A stretch of 64,000 nt of DNA from Paraphysomonas bandaiensis (GCA_965644295.1 CBFFRP010000090.1:96833-160832); one strand, 5' to 3'. Positions 2,538 through 20,169 are shown, numbered from the stretch's first letter. Notes: generated by a model from the letters alone, not told the origin. Numbers and translations: made by a program.

Positions 2538-5500
2538 ATGCCACGAGTGAATCAGAGTAGTAGAAATCCCACTCTTGAGCCCATCATGCGCTCATCCACC
2601 ACACAGCCACAGTATCTCTCTTCTGGTTCAAGAAGGGGTCAAGACTGGGACTCGAGTTGTCCAGCAGGTGGAAAAGTGATGATGGAATACAGTGCCATAA
2701 CAGATCCGTACTGCCCGTACACGCGAACAAAGGCATTTAAAAAGCATATGAAACGACAGCAGAAACTTGAAAAAATTCCTGCGGAAAAGTTATCGAAGTC
2801 ACTTGGTGCCGGGCTGCAGACTTCGATGAACACCTCTAGTCGGCCAACTTCAGCTCCTCAACGCAAAAACGCCCCGAAACACCAAAGCGAGAATTTTCTG
2901 AGTAGCGGTGTAACTATATCTTCAGAAGCTCAAGGTAGTGCTGCCGAAAGTCAAGCTGAATTGGAGGTATTGAAGGCTATTTTGAACCGCGAGGGTTATC
3001 TCTCTCGCCTGAGCAAGGTTGTTAAGAAAGTGGACAAAAAGTTCAAACCAGAGATCGCAGATGTTCTGGACATGATACGCATTGCCACTACAGATGTTGT
3101 GGATGCTATCGAGAATTGGCGAAATATTAAGGTAAATGTGACTGACGCATCTGATATGTCGAGTGATTTTTGTCGCTTACAGAACGATCCAGATTGTGCG
3201 TTTATGTGGAATGGAATTAATTACTTACTCAAGATTCCTACTGACATGGACTATATTGACCGGTGTAAAGTTATCACAGACTGGCTGGGGTTTGGAATTT
3301 CCCGTAACCCATTCTGTGTCCCGTATCCAATGGAGGAAGGAGCAGAATTATTCTCGGGATCCCTGATGGCCACATCAGAGGGTCCGAGCGAACAGATGTC
3401 CGTCTCGACGACTGATGGGTTTGTAATTGGCGGGAGTAAAAGTTTTTCGAGTTCATCTAAGTTGCGGAACAAATTTCCTCGTGCATCTCGTCAGGGAGGT
3501 GAGGAATATGCATCGGCCAGTGTTGGATCTCCCTATAAGAGGGGTAGCGGTGATATATCGGGTTATACACCTAGCACATATGGTGGAGGCGCAGCGCTGG
3601 CAGGCTCGACATCCAAGGGTGCGGTACAGTCCTTTATTCCTAATAAAGAAATGGTTCGAATACGTAACGCTGAGAGGGTGATACTGGTGGAAGAGGACAA
3701 GTTTGGTAGGCTAGACAGAGACCCCGAAGGAAGAATAATTCACAATTCCCAGGTAATTTGCGACGAATATATGTAGTGCAGGATATGAATAGTGATTGTA
3801 CGTATGTTTTTTTATATTTACTGTTTGTTAGGAATTCGCTATGCCCATGTCGGTTTCGCAAAGGGGTGATGAGTTGAGTGGGGCTGGGCTTGATAACGAG
3901 GTTGATTTATCAGACGGCGATGTGGATGCACTAGATAAAGTGACTCAGCGTCCAATCACAGGAAACAAAGAGCGTAGTGTGAGAGCGGTGGACGGTGGAA
4001 TGATTACATCTGGGGTGTCTCAATCTCGGGTGTCACATCTTCCCACACGCTCGCATGAAGTAAATACTAAGAACAGTAACAGGAAGAAAACAGTTGGGGA
4101 TAGGCTAGCTGAGATCACAGCACTGAAAGAGAAGATAGCCATGGAAAAGTCGCTTCTCGAAAAATCACAACAGCAGTTAGATGAATTGAATGGTGTCAAG
4201 GTTGTCAAACCCAAGAAGGGCCGTGTTCAGAGTAAAACAGCCAAGAATATTGATGGGAAAGGAACGTTGGTGGAAAGTGTAGCGAATGAAGATGAAGTCA
4301 AGGAGGATAGAGACGAAGTTGACAACGTGAAAAGTAGTTCTGACTATGGAAAAGAGATATATATAGTAGAAGAAATTGAGCATAAAACTCTGCAAAATGA
4401 AGAAAGCGATGCGCGAAATAGTCCACAGAAAGATGTGCACTTCGATCCATATGATCTTTACGCAACCAAAGCTCAAACTCAAGTCCGAAAGTGGCTGGCC
4501 CAGCGGTTCGTGACCCATTATAGAAAAGCAGCGAATGAAGCGAGTAATGTTATCCAAACGAGAGTTAGAGGCATGTGTGCGAGATTAAGATGCAGGAAGC
4601 TCATGAGACAGAAACGCGCGGCAATTGAAATTCAAAGGCATTTTCGTGGAATGTCGTCAAGAGTAAGTATTTAGTAACCGTCATGTGATAATGTTTAATA
4701 TCTACGATAGCTGGCTAGTGCTGCTGTGGCTCGAAATTATCACGATTGTAAGGCTGCTATTAAAATACAGAAGATATGGCGACGCATTCTGGCCCTTAAT
4801 CGCGTTGAAACAAAAAAAATACTAGATGACTGCTCTGCAGATGCAATGGAATGTGTAAACGCAAGGAATTTATTTCCAATGGATGTGAAAGAGCTATCGA
4901 TTCGGATTCAATTGGCACTAAGCGAGCCTCATAATGTTACTCTTCCGCCTGATGAAGTACTTCACTTACTTCGGATGAGTAGTATTCTACTCGCAGCCGG
5001 AGAAGGAGTTTCAAACCTAACTTCAACTGATCAGGGTGTGTCTACCTCGAGTCCTACACAAGATAGCCGCAATATGTCTTGGCAACAAGCAATGAAGCTT
5101 GTGAACAGATCAAATAAATTTCTTCGACGCATCAGGGCTCTGGCGTACGCACCAATTGCAAAGCCTCCGCGCTTGATTAATCTTCCTGATGATGCAATAG
5201 CACTGTATAAGGCACAGGGCCGCAACCCTAAATGGTGTCTCTCATATTTTGAATCAATTGGAAAAGGCTCGAAGTTTTGCGCACAGTTATTTAAGTGGCT
5301 TGTAAGCATGATTCAAGTGGGCCAGGCTCAAACGAAGTTCTTTGAGTACATTGGCGATAAATTTCCGGATTGGCTCCCGAAATTGTTTGAGGTACAGAAG
5401 CAAGCTCGCAAATGCGAGTTTGATATAGCATTGAACAACCGTTCTATTGCTCTTATTATTCAAACAATTGAGGTAACCCCTGATGATGGGAATCTAAAAC

Positions 5501-8500
5501 TTATTCTTGAAAAAGAAAAGCAAGCCCTTGTCAAAGAAAACGAGGGGCTTGACTGTAAATTACAGAGCTATACTAAAAGAGAGAAAATAATATGTGATGA
5601 TCAAAACGATGTGGAAACATCCACGCTTGATACAATGACCGCAAAGTTGGACATGAAAGAAAATAGTCTAAGAGAGACTGCTCAAGAATATTTGAGTCTA
5701 ATCAAATTAACTGAAGAAGGTGACATGTCAGCAGAAAGTAAGTTACAACCCACAAGGGAGAAACTTACTGCATTGCGCTCAGAGGTACAAGACGCTAGAA
5801 TTCAGCATGGTCTGCTCGTGGCCCAGGTTGATAGCAATCGGAAACGGCGACGAAATAGAAAGCCTATTTCCGCTAATGTACTTGTTAAGGTAAATCTTGC
5901 CGGAGAAGCTAAAGCTTTGCTGACCCTCGCGACGGCCAAGAAGGCTGTTCTTTTATTGGATCGGGGCATTCATTCAGAAGATGGGCTGCATCGAAATCCT
6001 GATGCTGCCGCCATATATGACGACTTGTGCTACCAAGAGAGGCAGCGAAAGACTGAATTTCGATCATTGCTGCGGCAAGCTGACGAGGAGCTCCAGGTTC
6101 TTAATAATTCATTCACGAGTGGAATATTCAAACGCGAAGAAGATGAAAGGAATGAGCGTGCGAAATTTGTTCCCACTGAGGCGGAGCTTGAGGAAGAGCG
6201 TATGGAAGATGAACGTGAAGCGAGGGAGGAGCGTTTTGCAAACCAGAATTTTGTGCCTCATGAAGTGATGTACGATGCTCCTGACAGACTGCGGCCAGTA
6301 ATATTGGCTTTTGGTCGCGATGTGCCTGGTTTCACCAAGGATAAGATCATATCTGATGTGACTGCGCAACTTCCTGGAATGTTTATACAGCTGGACTGCG
6401 ACGGAAACATGGGGCTTGATCGCAATGAAATGCAGGGCGTGTTAGATGCCAAGAAGTCAATTATCATATCGGTTGATCATGGCCTAACACAAACCAGCCG
6501 TGTTGCTTTCATGAAAGCTTACTCTACCGTCGTGCGATGTTTAGTTCCAAAGCCGTACACAATATTTGTGTTAGGGGAAGATGGGAATGCTCGCAAAGCA
6601 AACGGCGATCAACGTTTTGGTGTATCTGTCAAAGACATTCAGCATTTGCACGATGCACCAATAAAGCTATCACTGGAGAAAATGGCGTGGATTTTGCAAG
6701 AGCTCGTGACTGATGATATTCGCCAGCGAATGGAGTTACGGGCTGCAATGATTGTTCCTCCGTCCCCTGCATATATTATATGTTTGGAAGCGCTCTTCAT
6801 TGCACAGTCTGATCATACGAGATTCCAGCAACCAGAAGATAATATTGCAGCTATTTCGTATCGGGCAACACAGGCTTTACTCCAAGATCCGCATCGCCTT
6901 GTTGCCCTTCTGCAGCAAATGGGACGCGGAAAAGCAGATGAGAAGTTGTGTGATATATTGAAAAATTACACCGCACATCGTTCGTGGCCGTATCCGTCGC
7001 ATCCGGAAAGGCAGAGTGACCCACTGTTAAACTTGTTAGCAACTTATGTTGAGGAATGGACCAACAGTGAAGTGATGACACTTGAGCGAGGCGGTATACC
7101 CGATAGTGGTTTATTCAAAAATTCCATGGAAAGAGTGCAAAGTGTCGTCACCATAGCTGATGTAACTGATGCTAATGATGAATTGGCGGCGAAAAAAAGG
7201 TCTGGTTGGAAGACTCCAATGACTCAAATTTTGAAAGGAATTTTGTATGAGATGAGAGTTGCGAAGACTGTGCGGAAGATTGAAAAATATATGTACAGTA
7301 TAAATGTATACCGTGAGGCTGGGCGAATATTCTTTGATGCGTATGATGCAAGCACGTCACAGAGCTATGTAACGTCCGTATCCCTCTTCGAGGTGCCTTC
7401 GCTTCTTGTACCTAATGCTTTAACAAGTGACATGTCTAAAGAATCTGAAAGTGTGTCACCTCCTATGACCCCAAAAGAAATGTATATGCGATTAGTGAAG
7501 TTGCTTCGATTCCAGAAGGCCTCAAAGCTGAGGTCTAGTCGGAAAGAGCTGTTATGCAGGAGGGAAAATAGGTTCATGAGCCATCAAGTAACGAAGTTAT
7601 GCGGTCACTCCGTAATGCTCAAGTGCTTTGAGGCTGCTTTAGGTGAACTATACTTTGAGGCTTATTTACCAGAATATAGCGCTAAGCTGACGCTTCAAGT
7701 CGAAGACACTTTACGGTTAAAAATGTTAGCGAATTGTGACCAGCAGTTGGAGCATCGCATGTTGGAATCTGATTATAGTGTGGATTTGTTACCTTATGTG
7801 TTGGATCGTTTGCGCGTTACGCCCACCAAACCTGTCACCGATTCGCGAAAAGAAAAAGTTACAACTACTTCAGCGTTGTCACAGAAAACATCCAATCAAG
7901 GGTTTAGTTTGGTTCTGAACTGTAAAGCTGGTCCAGGTCGATTCCTTACAAAGAAAATTTTGTCTTTTGCTGGTATCCCATATTTATTGGCCTTACGCTC
8001 CTCTGCAGTCTCACAAACTCTGCGTATTATCGCGTACGAGCCGCGTACACAGGCGACTTCGGAATTGCGGTTGACTTCATTTTCCCGTGTGCTCTTACTT
8101 GGAGCAGTCAATGACGACCATAATATGTGGTTTCCAAAATTGAAAAAAATACTTCGCTTGGACTGGAAGAACAAGCGTGAATTGACAATTGACAAGACTT
8201 TATACCGTACAGTTAGGCGCATATCCAAGCGACGTTTAATCTTGACGTTTTCTCTTGCTGATGAAAATGGTCTTCTGTTCGACTTTCATGACCCTTTCAC
8301 AGGGGATCATTTCAGTGCTAATGTTACGAAGAATCATATTATAGATTTGTTGCATTATGACCAGAACGAATTGTTGGGTGAATCTAACACGGGTAAAATT
8401 GGCGCAGTTGTCAGTGCAGTGAAAGACATACTCCGATACATGCTGGGGGCAAGAAGGAAAGCGAATAAGGCGGGGACGAAAGCTATTGATCCATCTGAGT

Positions 8501-11390
8501 ACGATATACCATTGGAAGATATATTGTCACAGAAAGAGTGCTTGATTCATCTTGCTAATCAAATGCAGCAGCTGGTTGAGCGTTTGGTTCCATCTGATAT
8601 GAGGGGAGGTTATGTATGCCGATTTCCAACTGAAATTGTGTTTGAAAGGAAAGATCAAAGTGTTAACAATACTACGCATATTGTTTCCAATGATGAGTCG
8701 GTTATAACAGATGCCTCTTCAGCTACGTCTCGTATTCCCGCTTCTTGTTCTGGTATTGAGTCTGCAGTTTGTGATAGGGGAGTGGATACCAAGCCAAAAC
8801 TTGATATGGTTTTACGGCACACCCATCGCCTTGTTCAGCTTGAGCGTGGGGGTTCACTTGCGGATCTAATTGCTCGGCGGAGACAGCCAAAAGTGGTACG
8901 CATGGAGGACGAGTTGGACCGTCTTGCAGAATCCATGGCAGAGGCTGCGAAGCAGCGAATGATTGCAGATAAGTTGGCGGCTGAAGAGTTGCATCGTAAG
9001 CTCGTGGTTGATGGGGATGATCTTTCTTCGACAAATGAAGCCATTTCCAAAGAAATATTGCCTGACAAATCTGACATAGCACCTGCCGCTTCAAATGCAG
9101 ATATAGCTCTTGGGCCACCAAAAACATTGCGAGAGGAGAAAATCCGTGAGGAACGAGCTCCATTAAAACAAAGAAGTGAGGGCGAAAAATCCTCGAAACC
9201 AAATGATGACGAATCATCTGTGCCAGTATCAGTCGAATTTGAGGATAGTAAATTAGATGAGAGTATTGTTTCTGGGGACTATTTTGAAAAGGAGACTCTG
9301 GGCACAAGTGTTTCTGCTTCTCCTCGGGACATGTTTGCCTCTGCAGATGATATTTCGGTGAGTCCCAGTTTGATTGACGACCATGTCAAGGTACCATCGA
9401 CCAGACAGCAGAAGTTCTTGGAATCAGTGAAGTGCCGCCCACCACAATCCCTCTCGCCAGAAGAAGTTGAGAAAGTTCTCAAAGAAATAAAAGTTAGAGG
9501 TGAAATATGCGTGTTTGAAAGAGGTGTCAAGACGAATTTCCGTGAAGGTACTTCAAGATGGCATGGACACGTTAGTACTACTGTTTATGAAGCTGCATGC
9601 TGGGATAACATCGAAGGAGTGGGACGGAGTTTCCGATTCGTGGTGTATGAAACTAGAACTGCCTGCTACTATGAGGGTGTCGTGCGATCTACAAAACATC
9701 TTCGTGAAGTACTTGGCCCGACTGCGCAACACTTGCTTCATGCGGAAAAAACGAAAGAAATGGTGCTATTCATCTGTCGAAACAGGTTAGAAGTAGTCAG
9801 AAACACTACAACCTGGGATGGCGTGCCAGTAGAAGACCCCATGGCTCCTGCTTATCGAATTGAGTTCAAGACTGATCGTTTATATACCGATGAAAAGATT
9901 ACCCCTGCCTACGTTGGAGGCGAAGCTGATGCTGAGGCGAATAAAGATAAACTTATTGACAACGGTAACCTCCTGTCGTTTTTATTATTTTTTTTACAGT
10001 TCATTTTGCAGTTGAAGCTCGTGGTAGGAAAATTCTTCGCATTGCGAAACGAATCAGCGGTCTGTTATTACAACTGGTCGTGTTTGAACTTCCGTCCGGT
10101 GATGTGGAAAAAGCGAAGGCGGCCGAGGAAGAAGCCAAAAAGAGAGAGACTGAAGGCAAAGAAGGTAATACGTCAAAGGCGAGTAATCCTCCTCGTGTGG
10201 CCACGAAAAAGCGAGCGAATATGGAGCAATATATATCTCCTCCCATTCGTGTTGTTGGTTACGATCCGCGCACTAAGAAGCGTTCGGTTCTTTTCATCCC
10301 ACCGGAAGCTGTGATGGAAGTTGCTGGCGGTGCCTATTCTCAATATCTAGAGTTTGACCGTAGACGTGAGTTGGGAAAGCTAATATGTGACGCGCTGCAG
10401 CTTAACTTCCCTCGAGGTGGTGGATTTGATATGATTGTTCCTTGGTCTAAGGCTACGAAAGAGTCTATGGGCGCAGTGGCCTCTGATAAGACTTCATGGA
10501 GATCTTCAGCTGAACGTATTCTACGAAGACCTGGTAAAATATTCCGGTCAGCAATTTCGATCACTGGTTACAATATCATCGTATCCGTTTACGCCACCGG
10601 TATTGGTTCAGATGGGGCCGTGGGTGACGACAAGACCGTTGTCGTCAACTTCTATTCCTCGCTGGCATCTGAGGCAACTGAAATTCGATTGCCAGAAAAT
10701 ATACAGGTTGAATATTTAGGACAGCCTGTGATGAATTACCCGTCAGGGGAAGATCGATCCACAGCAATAAGGAATATGTGTAAATACTTTCGCGTGGATA
10801 TATACGATGATCCCGATGTTGATTCCAGGAGAATTCTTGATGTGGAGATGCTCCCACATGGGAATAGTTCGAAGCCTGATTCACGACTTTCAGGAGCTGA
10901 AGATGATATTGGTACACAGGGTTTTTTGCCACCTGAGTCAACAGGAAAGCTTCTCTTCCGCAGAAATACTCAAGTGTATGTTGTAGAGAAGGGCGGTTTG
11001 TCAGATGTAGAGTTTTTGGTATCGCTGTATACTAAGACAGAACAAGAAGGCGCAGAGAGGGGTATTGTGGTAAAAGTATACGATCCGAAGATTTCAGTCA
11101 CATTCTTTCAAGACTACGGACACAATGAAATCATCGCGCTCTGCAATCAAGCAGATGAGCCTGATCTTCTCAGAGATATTGTCACTACCCGCGATTATGT
11201 TTGTGGTGAAGCTGATGATACCTTAGAAGAAGGCTTGGTTACACCAAGTGAAAAGGAAGAGTCTCAGGAGAAGATGAATGAGTTAATTTCTATACTCTGT
11301 GATATAGTTACGAAGGATATAGGGATGACGACGAATTCTCAGGGAGAGAGAAGCTTATGTTCTCGTAGTTCTGTTTTTGAACCAAGTTAA
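2538..11390 (+). CDS. large IQ-motif/coiled-coil protein (~2,870 aa, 5 exons) with two dynein-MTBD-like segments; probably flagellar
   Basis: ORFs 2538, 3841, 4726 and 10080 join in frame through GT-AG introns 3132-3182, 3753-3831, 4663-4710 and 9965-10011; IQ motifs AQTQVRKWLAQR, IQTRVRGMCAR, IQRHFRGMSSR, IQKIWRRILA. Confidence 0.85.
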
Positions 11391-14818: not shown

Positions 14819-17800
14819 ATGATGTTTACTGACTCTCCTTCATGTGAGGAAGGGGTGATCTCAGTGAAAGAATGGTTCTCTAGCTCTCCATTAGAAGAGT
14901 TTGAGCTGCATGAGGGGGATATGAGTATGGAGGAATACTGGGCTCAAATGACACTCTCTTATGCAGAAAATGAGAATGGAAGTTTAGATGAGGATGATGA
15001 TGAGGAGGATGAGGACAGCAGTGATAATGAAATAGATTTTGGTGATGAGTTTGTTATGCAGCCTCACAATGGCGCCATTCTTAGTTTAGCTACTGGTATA
15101 AGCGACGATGAGGACGAGGAAGAGGAGGAAGAAACGAGCTCACGTGATGACAAGTCTGATTATTGTGATGATAATAGCAGTGGTCATGAGTATGATGATG
15201 ACGGTGGACATGAAGGGTTGTTCGACAAGTATATGACTAGTCCGAGACCTACGGATGCCTCAGTCAACAAATCTACTCGTGATGAGCAAAATTTCTTTGG
15301 TCAAGGGATAGAAAATGAAGATAGCGACGAGGATGGGGTGACTGCCGACCTTTTAGGTGTATTGGGTGATGGTGCACAGTCACAACATGACCAAACGAGT
15401 ACTCCAATGTCGGAGCATAGTCATAAATCATCTCCTCAAAAGTCCCTCTCAATTGCGCAGAATAATGGTAATAATAGTAAATCGAATCCATATGAAGGCC
15501 AAAAACGCCCTGTTGCACAATCGAGAGGAAAGAATGGGGTTACAGAACGCAAGAGTGAACGTAAGGCACTGGTAAAGAGACACAGAGCTGCTCATGACGC
15601 GGAGAAGAAACACAAAGTACGGCGACACGTTTACTCATACAACGTCATCATATGTTTGTGTATAGATGTGGCTTCTTGAGATGGTTGAGAAGAAACGGCA
15701 AGAGGAAGCTGAGTTAATGGACAAAGTGCGGAAGGCAGAACTGAAGCGAAAGAAGTTCAAGGAGGTGCGTCTTGTTTCATCGAGTTGTGTATGTAATTAT
15801 TCGCATACACTATAAGTATATGAACTTGAAGTACAATGTACCTTCATTGACGCTATCCATGTAGGCTCTACTTGAAAGGGCTCGTGCCAAGCAGCAGGCG
15901 CAGCAGGAGGTAGACAATCAGGCACATGAACAGGAAGTTTCTAAACCAACGAAGAAGGTAATGAAAGTAATCAGATTTATTCCCCAGTATTTCATGTATA
16001 AATGTCAAAATCACTTATCGTACTACACTATTTCTGAGTAGTTTTATTTGTGTGCAATGTTGGTTGCGGTGTACGACCTCTGGCGTTGATACTTCACGCG
16101 GTAGTCTCATATATTGTACAGAAAGTTAAAAGACAACCTGCAGTCGATAGCAGCTGCGCAGTGCCAGGCAAAAAGAAAGATGATGGAGGTGTTGAGGATG
16201 GAGATGAGGAGGCCCTTTTGAAGGAGGAGGCGGAAGCTAGAAAGCAGGTGATGCTGCATTCGTACCTCGGAGTTTATATGAGTGATGTCAACTGGTACTC
16301 AGATGGAGGAAGCCATCAGGATACGGAAGAAGTTTAAGCGACAACAGAAGAAGATTCTGCAATCTCTTAAGCAGAAAAAAATAGAGGAAGAGAAGAAGGT
16401 GCGTTTTCCGTCATGTAATGTTGCCAGTATTTGCTTTTGTGTTGCTTTATCATTCGAATCTTAGATAATGGAAGCTATGGAGAACGATGAGCGGGTTAAG
16501 GAACGATTGAGGAAGAGGTGGGGTTGGATAATTAACCTAGCTGTGTGACTTCTACTTATATCACACAAATGACTTGTGACGTTAGAAACTAATATTTATG
16601 CCACAGAAACGAAAAACTGCTTCGAAAACGAGAGGTTAAAGTTGGCACAAAGCCAGGGGGAGAGGGAGAAGAAGGACAAGACTGGGCAGCAGGTGTACAT
16701 GAAGTGTGTTTTAGTAACGACTTGGTATCTTCAAGTATATGCGCATTCTGCAGTGAATAGTAATAGGAGTATATAGTTAGGGATGATAGTGTTTTTGGAT
16801 GCTGAAGCCATAGCGGATGCCATAGTGGATGTTGTTATTATTACCACGTATTGATAGAAATTGTTGATTGTTTCAGGAAGTGGTGTGTCTGCTGTCCGCG
16901 CCTCTCGATCTCAAGGAGACCCAGCTGTCCCTATTACTGCGACGGAGTCTGAGTCATCGCACCCAGAGCGGGTAGGAAAAGTTACCCGTCGTTCTCGCAG
17001 TGTCAGTGCCGCAGATCGCTCTGCTGGTGCTACCGAAAGCAGCTATGGGGAAGAATCAGCTAAGCCGCGCAAACCCCGTAAAATGGCTTCCTCGTCCATG
17101 GCTGATGAAATATGCCGAGAGGGCGCGCAAGAAGATGATGGAAAGGATGAGAATGCCGATGAGGTAGCTGCTAAGGAGCGACGTAAGTTGGAAGCTAAGA
17201 GACGTCAAGAGAAGGTGGCCGCCCAATTGAAAGCCCTATCAGAGCAACGCCAAATGGCTGCCCTTAAGGCAAAAAGGCAAGAGGATAGAGCTAAGAAACG
17301 CGCCGATCTTCTTTCTGCCCGTGTTCAAATGGAGTTTTCCGAACGGAAGCTTATGGCGAAAGAAGATAAGTATGCGAATCCTGGCTGCCTGGGGGAAATG
17401 ATGCTAACTAAACCAGAGGCTACTGATGCCGAGGCTCCGAAAAAGAAAGTCACCCCGGAAATGGCTGAAGCAATGTTTAACCGACTTCAGGCACGCCAGG
17501 CCAAGTCTAAGGAATGTGCAGACGCAAGAGCGAACTCTATGCCACAAGCACGTGATTTTGCAGACTGGAAGAAAAAAAATGCCGTACCCTCCGATGCAAA
17601 GGTGTTCTGTATGACGGGTTGGTACCCCTGTGTAAAGTCAGCTCTCCTTCAACGAGGGTGGTACTTTAACCCTGATCATACCTCTCCTTACTGTGACCTG
17701 AAATGGACATTGCGCTCATCGGATGTAACAGCTGAAACTCTTCAACCGTGGCAGCTAACCAATCACTTCATGAAGAATATCGCACTAACAACAAAGATTG

Positions 17801-20169
17801 GTCTCCTGAAAAGCCTCCAACAGCTGGTGTGGATAGCTGATGCTACGGCGAATGATATAATCCCTCGCGGTTATGATTTGACTAATGCCATTGAAATTCA
17901 GGAGTATATCGATGACTTCCGTATTCAGCAGGCGGAATGTATCTTGAAAAAGCTCTATCACACTGCAACGGGGCTGGATAAGCCTAAATCTTTTAAGAAA
18001 CATGTCCCAATGACGCCACGGACTTCTCCCAGGGAGGCAGAGGGCGGAAATGGGAGTCAAACTCCCCAAAGAAAGGATGAAGATGTGGAAATTATTGCGG
18101 AAGTTCCCGAGCCGATTGTCGATGTAAATAAGTTACTTGTCAATCGAGCGGTGTTTTCGGCTTGTTGTGCAATTCTGGAGCGGTTTTTGAAACCATACTA
18201 TTCTGATTGTATTGACAACGAACCGCAGTACGACGACAACTATGCTGTGAGCGCCTTGGAATGGGAGTTGATTAGCGAATACGACATTTCATCGACCCAC
18301 ATACTTCCTGAGAATGCGCCAGAGCCGATCGATGATTTTATACAGGATAAGAACGATGGCACGGATCCTGGCTCTCCGTTGAACACAGCTAAGCAAAGAC
18401 AAGCCGTAGCACTGGCTAATAGGAACAGTAGACTTCAAAAGAAGCACGAAATGAAGGCAAGACAAGAGGCGTCCAATCATATCAAGGAACTTGTGCCTCT
18501 AGGTGAAGATGGACTCCGCACGGTGCATGAATTACTTAGTAAATGCAATATTATCAATTATAACCAGACGAGCTTGAATGGGAAGGGAGCGAGCGCAATG
18601 AATATGTGGATTGTAAAACCTGCTGCCAAGAGTAGGGGGAGAGGCATTACAACTTTCTGTGATCTGAAAAAGCTTCTGGATTATGTGGAGCTAGGGCGAA
18701 ACGGGAAGTCTTGCCTGACTTCATCGCACTGGATTGTGCAAAAATATATGGAAAATTCGATGATAATTGCTAATAGAAAGTTCGACTTACGCCAGTGGGT
18801 ACTAGTATACGACTGGAACCCACTCACGATATACTTCTTCGATGAGTTTTACGCAAGGTTCAGCGTAGACGAGTACTCTACGAGCGAGGAAACGATGGAT
18901 AATGCTCATGTGCACCTCGTTAATAATTCTATCGGTAAGACTAGCGAAAAATACCACGAGAAGTGCGTAACAGATAATGGGGAGGTACTCGATGGGTTCA
19001 TGCTGTCACATGAGCAGTTTTGCTCCTATCTTGAGTTCAAGTCAGGCGACCCTGGTATAGTATCGAATCTCAAAAGTCGCATGAAAGATATGGCTGTGTG
19101 GAGCTTAATGTGTGGTTCTGATGCTATTGAGCACCGCAAAAATTCCTGGGAGCTCTATGGGTTCGATTTTATGGTGGACGACGAGTTTAATCCTTGGTTA
19201 ATTGAGATAAATTCATCCCCTGCCTGTGACTACAGTACGAAGGTGACGGAGCGGTATGTCCAGAAAGCTCTTGTTGAGTTGCTGTCAGTTGTTTTAGACG
19301 TTAGGGAGTGGGAAAATACACCCAAAAAAGTAAGGGGAGAGAAGCCTGATACTGGTGGGTGGGAGTGTATATATACTGGTCCGTACCTGGAGACCCCTGC
19401 CTCCTCTTTTGGAACCGATATGTCTGTTAAGGGAGAGGCAATGAAGGTCCCTAGAAAGAAAGCACCAATGTACACTACTACTCTGTTCAGTGGAAAACAA
19501 CTGGGGTCTTCTCCTCCTAGAGAAAAGAAGGAAGCCGGATATTCCAAGGCCGTGGAATCGAAGAAATCCATCCCTTCTGAGTGCACTAGTAAGAGAGCCG
19601 CGTCTACGAGCAATACGTTTGTGAAATATGACCCGAATGAGTGTAGTGATTCTGAGGAGGAAAGCGGCAGCCCTGGGCCTGTTAAACTGAAGCCTTCTCC
19701 GGAGCGTGCACGAAACTCTACTGCTAGTAAATCTGGCAAGCGCCCAGAGCATCTTCCTCGCGCCTCTGAGAAATCTCTAAGTGGTAGTAGAAATGCAGAG
19801 AGAGGCGACACCGTACACAGCTCTATTTTGCCTCCCAGTCAAGTTCGTGCTGCTGCTCTTTCTACCATCGGAGGTGAGACAGAAGTCGAGCCTGTACGCT
19901 CTGTAAATAGTACCCGTGGGTCCTTTGTAAGCAGCCGTGGCACTGACAGTGGAACGGTTGCAATGCTAAACGATAGCGACAGTGACGATGAGGGACAGCC
20001 GGTTGGGGCAGCTAAAATAGCTCCAGAGACTGCTACAGTTGCTGCGGTCACTCAGCCGAAGAAAATGTCTATCAAAAGTCGCGCTAAATCGGGTGTGCCG
20101 TCAGATAGCTGTTCAAATAATGCCAGTGGTGCACCGATTCCAATAAAAACTCTGACTCTCGATTTCTAA
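14819..20169 (+). CDS. TTLL3: tubulin glycylase, TTLL3/TTLL8 family (~1,550 aa, 8 exons)
   Basis: TTL motifs MWIVKPAAKSRGRGI, WIVQKYME...RKFDLRQWVLVYDWNPL, ELYGFDFMVDDEFNPWLIEINSSP. The upstream acidic exon (14819-15616) and six small coiled-coil exons splice in frame via GT-AG introns into ORF 16861. Confidence 0.9.

What the first reader, a model, noticed from the sequence alone, without database searches (positions are those of the whole stretch)
4840..7065. Two dynein microtubule-binding-domain-like modules in a non-motor IQ protein
Seen in sequence: segment 1 (~4840-5330) reads NLFPMDVKEL...LPPDEVLHLLRMSSILL...SWQQAMKLVNRSNKFLRRI...NPKWCLSYFESIGKGSKFCAQLFKWLVSM. Segment 2 (~6670-7065) reads ELVTDD...PPSPAYIICLEALFIA...SYRATQALLQDPHRLVALL...ILKNYTAHRSWP...LLATYVEEW. 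Established knowledge: the dynein stalk-head pattern is l...di.El....PP..V..v.eav.iL...W...k.ll....Fl..l...Y..nP.f.......S.a...L..Wv.a. A long coiled coil follows segment 1, and no AAA/Walker motifs are visible. Inference: a calmodulin-regulated, motor-less microtubule tether or cross-linker built from repurposed dynein MTBDs, possibly axonemal.
Basis: partly seen in the sequence, partly recalled or inferred. Interest (0 to 1): 0.7.

Follow-up and report, generated by a model that had tools for sequence, protein, structure and literature searches.

The report
Motor-less protein with two dynein microtubule-binding domains
A large, expressed gene of a marine flagellate encodes a protein with no motor that carries two real copies of the small "foot" dynein motors use to grip microtubules, preceded by calmodulin-type IQ motifs; this uncharacterised stramenopile family shows that the dynein foot has been reused outside dynein.

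Summary

- **Gene:** both segments lie in one spliced, expressed gene at 2538-11390 (+), with four exons and about 2,892 aa.
- **Segment 2 (about 6652-7092):** this is a sequence-level homologue of the dynein MTBD. Its family profile hits 32 solved dynein heavy chains (E down to 5e-9) and a DNAH7-like dynein of the same genome (E 2.6e-9). hhalign gives 97.7%. In an unbiased search of 48,161 chains the five best matches are all dynein MTBDs (Z 10.3-12.8).
- **Segment 1 (about 4786-5373):** this copy is more diverged. hhalign gives 96%, and all ten best structural matches are dynein MTBDs (Z 10.8-12.9).
- **Controls:** shuffled and reversed profiles score at noise level.
- **No motor:** there is no AAA+ module and no Walker A motif anywhere in the gene.

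Three to four IQ motifs end where dynein's CC1 helix would enter MTBD-1. MTBD-2 has no stalk and is inserted into a degenerate P-loop nucleotide-kinase-like domain. The family is stramenopile-wide (oomycetes, Ectocarpus, Hondaea, Cantina) and everywhere unannotated.

Microtubule binding, calmodulin control and an axonemal location remain inferences. MTBD-2 is acidic in this protein and may have been repurposed.

The parts
2538..3752 (+). Exon 1 (405 codons). N-terminal region with no recognised domain.
   Evidence: ORF. Exon end fixed by the spliced transcript contigs X1 and X2, joint 3750->3830 (cut +2), GT..AG. No Pfam hit.
3753..3831 (+). Intron 1 (79 nt, GT..AG).
   Evidence: Skipped in transcript contigs X1 and X2 and in the marine metatranscriptome X4. 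Present in the DNA run X12.
3832..4662 (+). Exon 2 (277 codons). Short coiled coil, acidic stretch, then the first IQ motifs.
   Evidence: Pfam IQ 21.9 bits, above the 20.3 cut-off.
4465..4662 (+). IQ neck, first part: one degenerate and two clear IQ motifs (IQ cores at nt 4552 and 4630).
   Evidence: Regex and Pfam IQ. Repeated weak IQ hits upstream of MTBD-1 occur in many relatives.
4663..4710 (+). Intron 2 (48 nt, GT..AG).
   Evidence: Skipped in X1 and X2, present in the DNA run X12.
4711..9963 (+). Exon 3 (1,751 codons). Carries the last IQ motif, MTBD-1, the coiled coil, the P-loop-like domain with MTBD-2, the beta/alpha repeats and an acidic low-complexity linker.
4753..4815 (+). Last IQ motif (IQ core at 4765). 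IQxxWRR is invariant in the close subfamily. It ends where the CC1-like stub of MTBD-1 begins.
   Evidence: Invariant columns I14, Q15, W18, R19 in A2. Pfam IQ 13.9 bits, below the cut-off. The dynein superposition starts at model residue 21.
4786..5373 (+). MTBD-1: dynein-type microtubule-binding domain with short CC1-like and CC2-like stubs (helical core about 4858-5340). It has a long disordered H2-H3 loop and net charge +6.
   Evidence: VIA-align: all ten best matches are dynein MTBDs, Z 10.8-12.9, rmsd 2.8-3.8 A, 123-148 residues aligned. hhalign A6 against dynein stalks: 96%, E 4.6e-9. Foldseek top hits are dynein chains. Charge.
5374..6240 (+). Long helical / coiled-coil region after MTBD-1, predicted as folded-back helical hairpins.
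   Evidence: AF2 helices 216-412 with pLDDT mostly 80-95. The structural matches here are F-BAR or three-helix bundles. Helix 2-23 of the core model.
6280..6582 (+). Degenerate P-loop nucleotide-kinase-like domain, N-terminal part (four beta-alpha units). No Walker A motif.
   Evidence: VIA-align wide: Z 7-8.6 to gluconate, APS, adenylate and guanylate kinases and to the CaV-beta GK domain, spanning model residues 35-360. Atlas: AAA_33 clusters, TM 0.52-0.59. No GxxxxGK[ST].
6652..7092 (+). MTBD-2: dynein-type microtubule-binding domain without a stalk, inserted into the P-loop-like domain. Net charge -5.
   Evidence: Unbiased VIA-align: all five best matches are dynein MTBDs, Z 10.3-12.8, rmsd 2.5-2.9 A, 120-131 residues aligned. 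The A7 profile hits 32 solved dynein heavy chains, E 5e-9 to 0.0095, and dynein C200 of the same genome, E 2.6e-9. hhalign 97.7%. 12 of 64 members hit Pfam MT.
7126..7257 (+). P-loop-like domain, C-terminal part (a strand and a helix after the MTBD-2 insertion).
   Evidence: The kinase alignments run through model residues about 320-360. Secondary structure.
7255..8190 (+). Three beta-sheet-plus-helix units (PUR / PepSY-like). Part of the conserved core module.
   Evidence: AF2 core model, pLDDT 87.6. Weak Foldseek hits to PUR-alpha, prob 0.8-0.89. PepSY-like rows in the Atlas search.
9964..10010 (+). Intron 3 (47 nt).
   Evidence: The JGI transcript contig L013 encodes P0008 (997 aa, 100% identical) as one open frame across 9963|10011.
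10011..11390 (+). Exon 4 (459 codons plus stop). C-terminal region conserved in relatives, no recognised domain.
   Evidence: tblastn of P0003, P0007, P0001 and P0008. No Pfam hit.

Best explanation
The finding lies in a four-exon, expressed gene (2538-11390, +) for a non-motor protein of about 2,892 aa. It belongs to an unannotated, stramenopile-wide family. Shown: the protein contains two domains homologous to the six-helix microtubule-binding domain (MTBD) at the tip of the dynein stalk. MTBD-1 follows a neck of 3-4 IQ motifs and is followed by about 300 residues of coiled coil. MTBD-2 has no stalk and is inserted into a degenerate P-loop nucleotide-kinase-like domain that lacks a Walker A motif. 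Repeated beta/alpha domains follow. There is no AAA+ ring, linker or tail. Inferred: the protein is a microtubule-associated tether or cross-linker. The basic MTBD-1 grips the tubulin lattice as dynein's foot does. The IQ neck occupies the place of dynein's CC1 helix and binds calmodulin or a related light chain, so that Ca2+ could shift the helix entering MTBD-1 and change its affinity, by analogy with dynein's CC1/CC2 registry switch. MTBD-2 would provide either a second lattice contact or a repurposed partner-binding surface held on a pseudo-kinase scaffold. The likely site of action is the flagellar apparatus or the cortical microtubules of flagellated stramenopile cells.
For: Gene model and expression:
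- Spliced 8.9-kb transcript contigs and a marine metatranscriptome show the GT..AG joints, while a DNA run does not.
- A JGI transcript contig spans the last junction.

MTBD-2:
- The family HMM hits 32 solved dynein heavy chains, E 5e-9 to 0.0095, always at their MTBD.
- It hits a DNAH7/12-like dynein of the same genome at E 2.6e-9.
- It scores positively on all 11 own-genome dynein stalks tested, and above 17 bits on 9 of them.
- 12 of 64 members hit Pfam MT, best E 2e-6.
- hhalign gives 97.7%, E 1.4e-12.
- The unbiased fold search puts dynein MTBDs in all of its first five places, Z 10.3-12.8.

MTBD-1:
- hhalign gives 96%, E 4.6e-9.
- All ten best VIA-align matches are dynein MTBDs, Z 10.8-12.9, covering nearly the whole domain.
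- MTBD-1 against MTBD-2 gives 92%.

Controls and context:
- Shuffled and reversed profiles score 10-20, with probability at most 1.1%.
- Both MTBDs are conservation peaks: identity 0.59 and 0.63 against 0.50 overall and 0.20 in the linker.
- The IQ motif passes Pfam's cut-off here and scores higher in orthologues.
- No Walker A and no AAA domain.
- P-loop kinase-like fold around MTBD-2.
- MTBD-1 has net charge +6, like or above dynein MTBDs, which range 0 to +4.
- Structural precedent: a globular domain of a non-motor MAP solved on the Toxoplasma intraconoidal microtubule (9ya2_L) matches MTBD-2 at Z 9.0 (PMC12819142).
Against: - No binding was measured or successfully modelled.
- MTBD-2 carries net charge -5 in this protein (family median 0). 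In the hhalign alignment a conserved Met sits where dynein H1 has its invariant Lys. Canonical lattice binding by MTBD-2 is therefore doubtful.
- MTBD-1 is not detected by plain HMMER or Pfam. Its assignment rests on profile-profile and fold evidence.
- Z of about 12-13 can arise between unrelated helical bundles, according to the tool's own note.
- The N-terminal 26 residues of the MTBD-1 model, which hold the last IQ motif, have low confidence, so the geometry of the IQ/CC1 junction is not established.
- The calmodulin-IQ complex prediction gave no verdict.
- An axonemal location has only circumstantial support.
Confidence: 0.6

Rival explanations
1. Only MTBD-1 is a working microtubule foot. 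MTBD-2 is an exapted dynein MTBD that now serves as a protein-protein or regulatory module within the pseudo-kinase domain, in the position of a kinase LID insert. On this reading the protein anchors something to microtubules rather than cross-linking them.
For: MTBD-2 has net charge -5 in this protein, against +6 for MTBD-1 and 0 to +4 for dynein MTBDs. It has no stalk and is embedded in a globular domain. The invariant H1 lysine of dynein aligns with a conserved Met.
Against: MTBD-2 is the copy that keeps the stronger sequence similarity to real dynein MTBDs. It is the best-conserved segment of the protein. Its family median charge is neutral, with a range up to +9. A similar stalk-less globular domain sits directly on a microtubule in 9ya2_L.
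Confidence: 0.3
2. The gene is a decayed or truncated dynein heavy chain: a non-motile dynein relic in which the AAA ring has eroded beyond recognition.
For: It has two dynein-derived domains and a P-loop-fold domain next to one of them. Non-motile dynein heavy-chain subfamilies are known (PMC11785096, seen).
Against: No Pfam dynein tail, linker, AAA or C-terminal domain is found in this protein or in nine full-length relatives. The P-loop domain matches nucleotide kinases and AAA_33, not AAA+ modules. The domain order (IQ, MTBD, coiled coil, kinase-like domain with an inserted MTBD, beta repeats) is not the dynein order. The architecture is conserved and expressed across stramenopiles.
Confidence: 0.04
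3. The resemblance is convergent or a chance match. Both segments would be generic helical bundles unrelated to dynein.
For: Helical bundles can reach Z of about 13 without homology, according to the tool's note. The window's own segments do not hit Pfam MT on their own.
Against: HMMER-level hits of the segment-2 family profile to 32 dynein heavy chains fall precisely at their MTBDs. The hallmark PP / W / LL..F / L..WV positions align in register. Shuffled and reversed controls score at noise level. Dynein MTBDs are the only fold in the top ranks of an unbiased search.
Confidence: 0.03

Closest known systems
Dynein heavy chain microtubule-binding domain (MTBD; central part of Pfam MT, PF12777), especially of single-headed inner-arm dyneins (DNAH1/DNAH7/DNAH12, Chlamydomonas DHC2)
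   Same: Both segments have the same six-helix fold, with in-register conserved PP (start of H2), W (H3), LL..F/L (H4) and L..WV (H6) positions. Segment 2 is detectable by plain HMMER. Both carry an H2-H3 insertion where flap-bearing axonemal dyneins have theirs; the flap comparison is from my own knowledge of the dynein-c and DNAH7 structures.
   Different: These domains are not at the tip of a long CC1/CC2 hairpin that emerges from an AAA+ ring. MTBD-1 has an IQ neck where CC1 would be. MTBD-2 has only helix stubs and is inserted in a kinase-like domain. One polypeptide carries two copies. There is no ATPase to drive an affinity cycle.
Toxoplasma gondii intraconoidal-microtubule MAP, chain 9ya2_L. 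This is probably ICMAP2, inferred from the residue numbering 1208-1457 and the paper's statement that about 10% of the 1,678-aa protein is resolved (PMC12819142).
   Same: It is a non-motor, mostly coiled-coil giant protein of a SAR-clade protist. Its small globular helical domain sits on the outer microtubule surface between protofilaments and helps hold two microtubules together. That domain matches MTBD-2 at Z 9.0, rmsd 3.2 A, over 127 residues.
   Different: No sequence similarity was detectable (it is absent). The paper does not describe the domain as dynein-like. No IQ neck or kinase-like host domain is known for it. Homology with the present family is untested.
IQ-neck proteins (myosin lever arms, IQ-domain MAPs)
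   Same: Three to four IQ motifs lie at a spacing of about 23-26 residues and form one predicted helix. This is the classical calmodulin / light-chain binding neck.
   Different: The neck leads into a dynein-type MTBD rather than out of a motor head. Light-chain binding was not shown here.
P-loop nucleotide-kinase-like pseudoenzymes (MAGUK / CaV-beta guanylate-kinase-like domains; AAA_33 / KTI12 / zeta-toxin class)
   Same: The alpha/beta domain around MTBD-2 has this fold (Z 7-8.6; TM 0.52-0.59) and, like the GK-like scaffolds, lacks the catalytic P-loop motif.
   Different: It hosts a domain insertion of about 150 residues of dynein origin. There is no sequence-level membership in any Pfam kinase family.

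Membership tests
Dynein MTBD (MTBD part of Pfam MT, PF12777) | Six-helix bundle that superposes on solved dynein MTBDs over most of the domain | tested here: met
   MTBD-1: Z 10.8-12.9, rmsd 2.8-3.8 A, 123-148 residues aligned out of 138-163 in the MTBD-only entries; all ten best matches are dynein. MTBD-2: Z 10.3-12.8, rmsd 2.5-2.9 A, 120-131 residues aligned; all five best of 48,161 chains are dynein.
Dynein MTBD (MTBD part of Pfam MT, PF12777) | Significant sequence or profile similarity to dynein MTBDs | tested here: met
   Segment 2: HMMER E 5e-9 to 0.0095 against 32 solved dyneins, E 2.6e-9 in the own genome, hhalign 97.7%. Segment 1: hhalign 96%, E 4.6e-9, but only sub-threshold HMMER hits. 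Controls score at noise level.
Dynein MTBD (MTBD part of Pfam MT, PF12777) | The single sequence passes Pfam's gathering score (24 bits) | tested here: not met
   The window's own segments give no PF12777 hit. 12 of 64 segment-2 relatives hit at E<=1, best 2e-6. The Cantina orthologue scores 20.8 bits, below 24. The Pfam model spans the whole 344-position stalk, and only about 130 positions of it exist here.
Dynein MTBD (MTBD part of Pfam MT, PF12777) | Borne on a long antiparallel CC1/CC2 coiled-coil stalk | tested here: not met
   MTBD-2 has only short helix stubs inside a globular domain. MTBD-1 has a long helix after it, but an IQ neck with a low-confidence junction before it.
Dynein MTBD (MTBD part of Pfam MT, PF12777) | Binds the tubulin lattice | not testable with these tools
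   Only indirect indicators are available: charge +6 for MTBD-1 and -5 for MTBD-2, and the structural precedent 9ya2_L on a microtubule.
Dynein heavy chain (motor) | Ring of six AAA+ modules with Walker A in AAA1, plus linker and tail | tested here: not met
   No Pfam AAA or dynein domain in any exon or in nine full-length relatives. No GxxxxGK[ST] motif. About 20 genuine dynein loci of the same genome are detected easily by the same method.
IQ calmodulin-binding motif proteins (PF00612) | IQ consensus motif above the curated score | tested here: met
   21.9 bits against a 20.3 cut-off in exon 2. A further motif at the start of exon 3 scores 13.9 bits. Orthologues score 25-41 bits. Regex cores lie at nt 4552, 4630 and 4765.
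IQ calmodulin-binding motif proteins (PF00612) | Binds calmodulin or a related light chain | tested here: inconclusive
   The complex prediction of IQ2-IQ3 with the genome's own calmodulin (L017:1255-1701) gave no verdict: score 0.30, mark 0.34.
P-loop nucleotide kinases (AAA_33 / NMP-kinase-like) | P-loop kinase alpha/beta fold | tested here: met
   Z 7-8.6 to many nucleotide and sugar kinases and GK-like domains. TM 0.52-0.59 to AAA_33 clusters.
P-loop nucleotide kinases (AAA_33 / NMP-kinase-like) | Walker A GxxxxGK[ST] after strand 1 | tested here: not met
   The motif is absent. The family consensus at that place is S-R-D-V-P...K, without the glycine-rich loop.

The most novel reading that the evidence does not exclude
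The family may be a natural experiment in which dynein's microtubule foot has been disconnected from ATP hydrolysis and wired to other switches. In MTBD-1 the CC1 helix, whose sliding sets affinity in dynein, would be replaced by an IQ neck, so that Ca2+/calmodulin rather than an AAA+ ring toggles lattice binding. MTBD-2 sits where a nucleotide-kinase LID would be, so a conformational change of the pseudo-kinase could gate a second contact. This would make the protein a Ca2+-switchable microtubule clamp or cross-linker of the stramenopile flagellar or cortical cytoskeleton. Together with the dynein-MTBD-like domain seen on Toxoplasma intraconoidal microtubules, it would point to an unrecognised class of MTBD-based non-motor MAPs in the SAR clade.
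Probability: 0.15. Interest if true: 0.85.

Novelty: new variant of a known kind. Interest (0 to 1): 0.72.

Why it matters
As far as I know, the dynein MTBD is treated as a domain peculiar to dynein heavy chains. Its affinity is thought to be set only through the stalk by the AAA+ ring. Four phrase searches of the open literature found no description of a dynein-type MTBD in a non-dynein protein.

This is a conserved, expressed protein family that carries two such domains with no motor. One is coupled to an IQ neck. The other has no stalk and sits inside a pseudo-kinase. That offers three things:
1. A new class of microtubule-associated protein to annotate in oomycete pathogens, brown algae and marine heterotrophic flagellates, where the members are now labelled 'hypothetical' or mislabelled 'Calmodulin'.
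2. Natural constructs for asking what an MTBD does when it is freed from the stalk registry mechanism.
3. A lead for re-reading the globular microtubule-bound domain of Toxoplasma ICMAP2.

Tried and rejected
- **Single-sequence phmmer of each segment against PDB:** no hits.
- **Shallow 9-sequence profiles:** these gave only weak signals, with hhalign at 67% and 17%, dynein H6 at E 0.14 and nothing for segment 2. Deeper alignments were needed.
- **ESM Atlas feature search of the segment-1 region:** only generic IQ clusters at score 0.76.
- **Foldseek with the whole 686-residue core model:** no clear match, because the domain signal is diluted. The unbiased VIA-align search resolved this.
- **Complex prediction of IQ2-IQ3 with the genome's own calmodulin:** no verdict (score 0.30, mark 0.34). 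This is not evidence either way.
- **Literature searches for a dynein-like MTBD outside dynein:** no papers. The two structure papers I read do not discuss the similarity.
- **Identity of chain 9fqr_Xl (Z 8.4):** could not be established, so it is left aside.
- **Degenerate AAA+ remnant of dynein as the host domain:** considered and rejected, because the fold matches are nucleotide kinases / AAA_33 and not AAA+.
- **C150 copy as an allele:** rejected. It is a paralogue at 71% nucleotide identity.
- **Joined spliced protein:** never assembled or searched. Every search used single exons or parts of them by reference.

Full report
**1. The gene**

The region belongs to a eukaryotic gene on the + strand with short GT..AG introns.
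- Logan transcript contigs of 8.9 kb from two runs of the source organism skip 3753-3831 (79 nt) and 4663-4710 (48 nt). A marine metatranscriptome shows the first joint. A DNA run of the same organism is unspliced.
- A JGI contig (L013) encodes a 997-aa protein that is 100% identical across 9963|10011, which fixes the third intron.
- The coding exons are therefore 2538-3752, 3832-4662, 4711-9963 and 10011-11387. That is 405+277+1751+459 = 2,892 codons, and the mRNA is expressed in culture and at sea.
- I never joined the exons for a search. Every tool call used one exon, or a part of one, by reference.
- Earlier notes of this scan describe the organism as a marine, apparently non-photosynthetic protist.
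- The genome holds about 20 dynein heavy-chain loci, so it belongs to a flagellate.

**2. The observation**

Both quoted peptides are present in the long exon. Pfam finds only IQ motifs, with no MT, AAA or dynein domain. No Walker A motif exists in any exon. Single-sequence searches against PDB are blank.

**3. Relatives**

- A word-index search found ten unnamed relatives at 35-61% identity.
- A full HMMER search with a 1,200-position profile found 428 cluster representatives at E<=1e-3.
- The named members are all stramenopiles: Phytophthora, Nothophytophthora, Lagenidium, Aphanomyces, Saprolegnia, Achlya, Thraustotheca, Ectocarpus, Hondaea and Cantina.
- They are annotated as hypothetical. 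UniRef auto-names some of them 'Calmodulin', presumably because of the IQ motifs.
- The precomputed and scanned Pfam content is IQ only, plus C2 domains in two distant members.
- The same genome has a paralogue on contig C150 (70% aa, 71% nt identity) and a remote one on C327.

**4. Segment 2 is a dynein MTBD homologue at sequence level**

I used a 64-sequence alignment of the segment (A7).
- **Solved structures:** hmmsearch against all solved-structure sequences returns 32 dynein heavy chains at E 5e-9 to 0.0095. Each is aligned at its MTBD. The best are inner-arm types: Chlamydomonas DHC2, DNAH1 and DNAH7.
- **Own genome:** besides the gene and its paralogue, the same profile picks out one further locus at E 2.6e-9. 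That locus is the MTBD of a DNAH7/DNAH12-like dynein.
- **All own-genome dynein stalks:** the profile scores positively on all 11 tested, and above 17 bits on 9 of them, always at the MTBD.
- **Pfam:** 12 of the 64 members hit Pfam MT on their own (best E 2e-6), while no other family is hit by more than two members. The Cantina orthologue scores 20.8 bits there.
- **Profile-profile:** hhalign against an alignment of this genome's own dynein stalks (A1) gives 97.7%, E 1.4e-12, over 130 columns that cover the MTBD.

**5. Segment 1 is a more diverged copy**

- The 56-sequence alignment (A6) gives hhalign 96.0%, E 4.6e-9, over 128 columns on the same dynein columns. The PP, W, F/L..L and SK.C..L..W positions are in register.
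- Against segment 2 it gives 92%, E 6.8e-7.
- Plain HMMER sees only the H5-H6 part at sub-threshold scores, and Pfam MT is not hit.
- Controls: the reversed dynein profile and 20 column-shuffled versions give scores of 10-20 and probabilities of at most 1.1%. The real scores are 67 and 86.

**6. Structures**

*MTBD-1 model.* The AF2 model of ORF residues 1-420 has pLDDT 75.6.
- Its Foldseek list is headed by dynein heavy chains and isolated MTBDs, with probability up to 1.0 but weak E-values.
- All ten best VIA-align matches are dynein MTBDs: Z 10.8-12.9, rmsd 2.8-3.8 A (one NMR model 7.6 A), 123-148 residues aligned, model residues 21-216.

*Core model.* The AF2 model of the conserved core (ORF residues 485-1170, 49-sequence alignment A5) has pLDDT 87.6 and pTM 0.75.
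- Foldseek on the whole model was uninformative.
- The Foldseek-independent search of 48,161 representative chains put dynein MTBDs in ranks 1-5: Z 10.3-12.8, rmsd 2.5-2.9 A, 120-131 residues aligned, model residues 159/165-302/305. This is exactly segment 2.
- Rank 6 (Z 9.0) is chain L of the Toxoplasma intraconoidal microtubule structure, 9ya2.
  - ICMAP2 is a non-motor MAP that binds between protofilaments and links the two microtubules (PMC12819142).
  - The chain assignment is my inference, and the paper does not mention a dynein likeness.

**7. Context of the two domains**

*MTBD-1.* It is preceded by an IQ neck.
- One degenerate and two clear IQ motifs lie at the end of exon 2. A fourth lies at the start of exon 3, and its IQxxWRR core is invariant in the close subfamily.
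- Repeated weak IQ matches upstream of MTBD-1 are seen in many relatives.
- The last IQ ends where the part that superposes on dynein's CC1 begins, at model residue 21. That junction has low model confidence.
- MTBD-1 is followed by about 300 residues of helices predicted as folded-back bundles.

*MTBD-2.* It has only helix stubs and interrupts an alpha/beta domain.
- Model residues 35-135 and about 320-360 together match nucleotide and sugar kinases and GK-like scaffolds at Z 7-8.6, and AAA_33 clusters at TM 0.52-0.59.
- That domain lacks the Walker A motif.
- Three beta-sheet-plus-helix units follow. Their PUR / PepSY-like matches are weak.

**8. Conservation and charge**

- The two MTBDs are among the best-conserved parts: identity 0.59 and 0.63 to seven homologues, against 0.50 overall and 0.20 in the acidic linker.
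- Net charge is +6 for MTBD-1 (family median +2.5). This genome's dynein MTBDs range from 0 to +4.
- Net charge is -5 for MTBD-2 (family median 0, range -12 to +9).
- In the hhalign alignment a conserved Met of MTBD-2 sits at the column of dynein's invariant H1 lysine.
- These points make canonical lattice binding plausible for MTBD-1 and uncertain for MTBD-2.

**9. Interpretation**

Shown: this is a conserved, expressed, motor-less stramenopile protein family with an IQ neck and two dynein-derived MTBDs, one of them inserted in a pseudo-kinase fold.

Inferred:
- The protein is a microtubule-associated tether or cross-linker.
- The IQ neck binds calmodulin or a related light chain. Because it stands where CC1 stands in dynein, it could modulate MTBD-1 affinity.
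- By profile scores, the source of the domains was an axonemal inner-arm-type dynein MTBD. This is not a phylogenetic proof.
- An axonemal or flagellar-root location is suggested only by the fact that every named member comes from an organism with flagellated cells. That sample is not exhaustive.

The calmodulin-IQ complex prediction returned no verdict and counts for nothing either way.

**10. Novelty**

Phrase searches of 8.4 million open papers and preprints found no description of a dynein-type MTBD outside dynein heavy chains. The library is incomplete, so this is absence of evidence only. I rate the finding as a new variant of a known kind: a known domain in a new, conserved, non-motor architecture.

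Noticed in passing
window 16861-20169 (+): The next large ORF downstream on the same strand encodes a tubulin-tyrosine-ligase-like (TTL family) enzyme (Pfam TTL, E 8.9e-58). It is a tubulin-modifying enzyme about 5.5 kb from a putative microtubule binder. The adjacency may be a coincidence.
   Followed up: no
G000:C150:326529-328853 (locus L014) and G000:C327:23292-23954 (locus L015): The genome has a second full copy of the gene (71% nt, 70% aa identity, same MTBD-1 and MTBD-2 order). This is a paralogue, not an allele. There is also a remote paralogue that matches the MTBD-1 profile at E 1.3e-34.
   Followed up: partly
PDB 9ya2 chain L, matched by model residues 163-303 (window about 6664-7086): The globular microtubule-bound domain of a Toxoplasma intraconoidal-microtubule MAP (probably ICMAP2) resembles the dynein-type MTBD-2 model at Z 9.0, rmsd 3.2 A, over 127 residues. 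The paper that reports the structure does not mention a dynein likeness.
   Followed up: partly
window 7255-8190, and probably again near 9500-9963 and in exon 4: There are repeated units of about 100-150 residues, each a four- or five-stranded sheet plus a helix, with weak PUR-alpha / PepSY-like matches. They form the conserved rear half of the family's core module, and their function is unknown.
   Followed up: partly
G000:C125:182047-182496 (L017:1255-1704), with equal-scoring copies on C256 and C338: Three intronless genes each encode a canonical 149-aa calmodulin, with identical EF-hand scores.
   Followed up: partly
proteins P0138 (3,786 aa) and P0144 (3,666 aa): Distant family members keep the IQ/MTBD-1 part but carry C2 domains (up to three; Pfam C2, E 3.3e-49). 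This hints at a membrane- or Ca2+-linked branch of the family.
   Followed up: no
UniRef entries of the oomycete and Hondaea orthologues (e.g. the cluster of P0054): Several orthologues of about 2,000 aa are auto-named 'Calmodulin' in UniRef although they contain only IQ motifs and no EF-hands. This looks like an annotation error that could spread.
   Followed up: partly
window 8930-9430 (ORF residues about 1401-1570): An acidic, serine-rich, low-complexity linker is the least conserved part of the protein (identity 0.20 to homologues).
   Followed up: no
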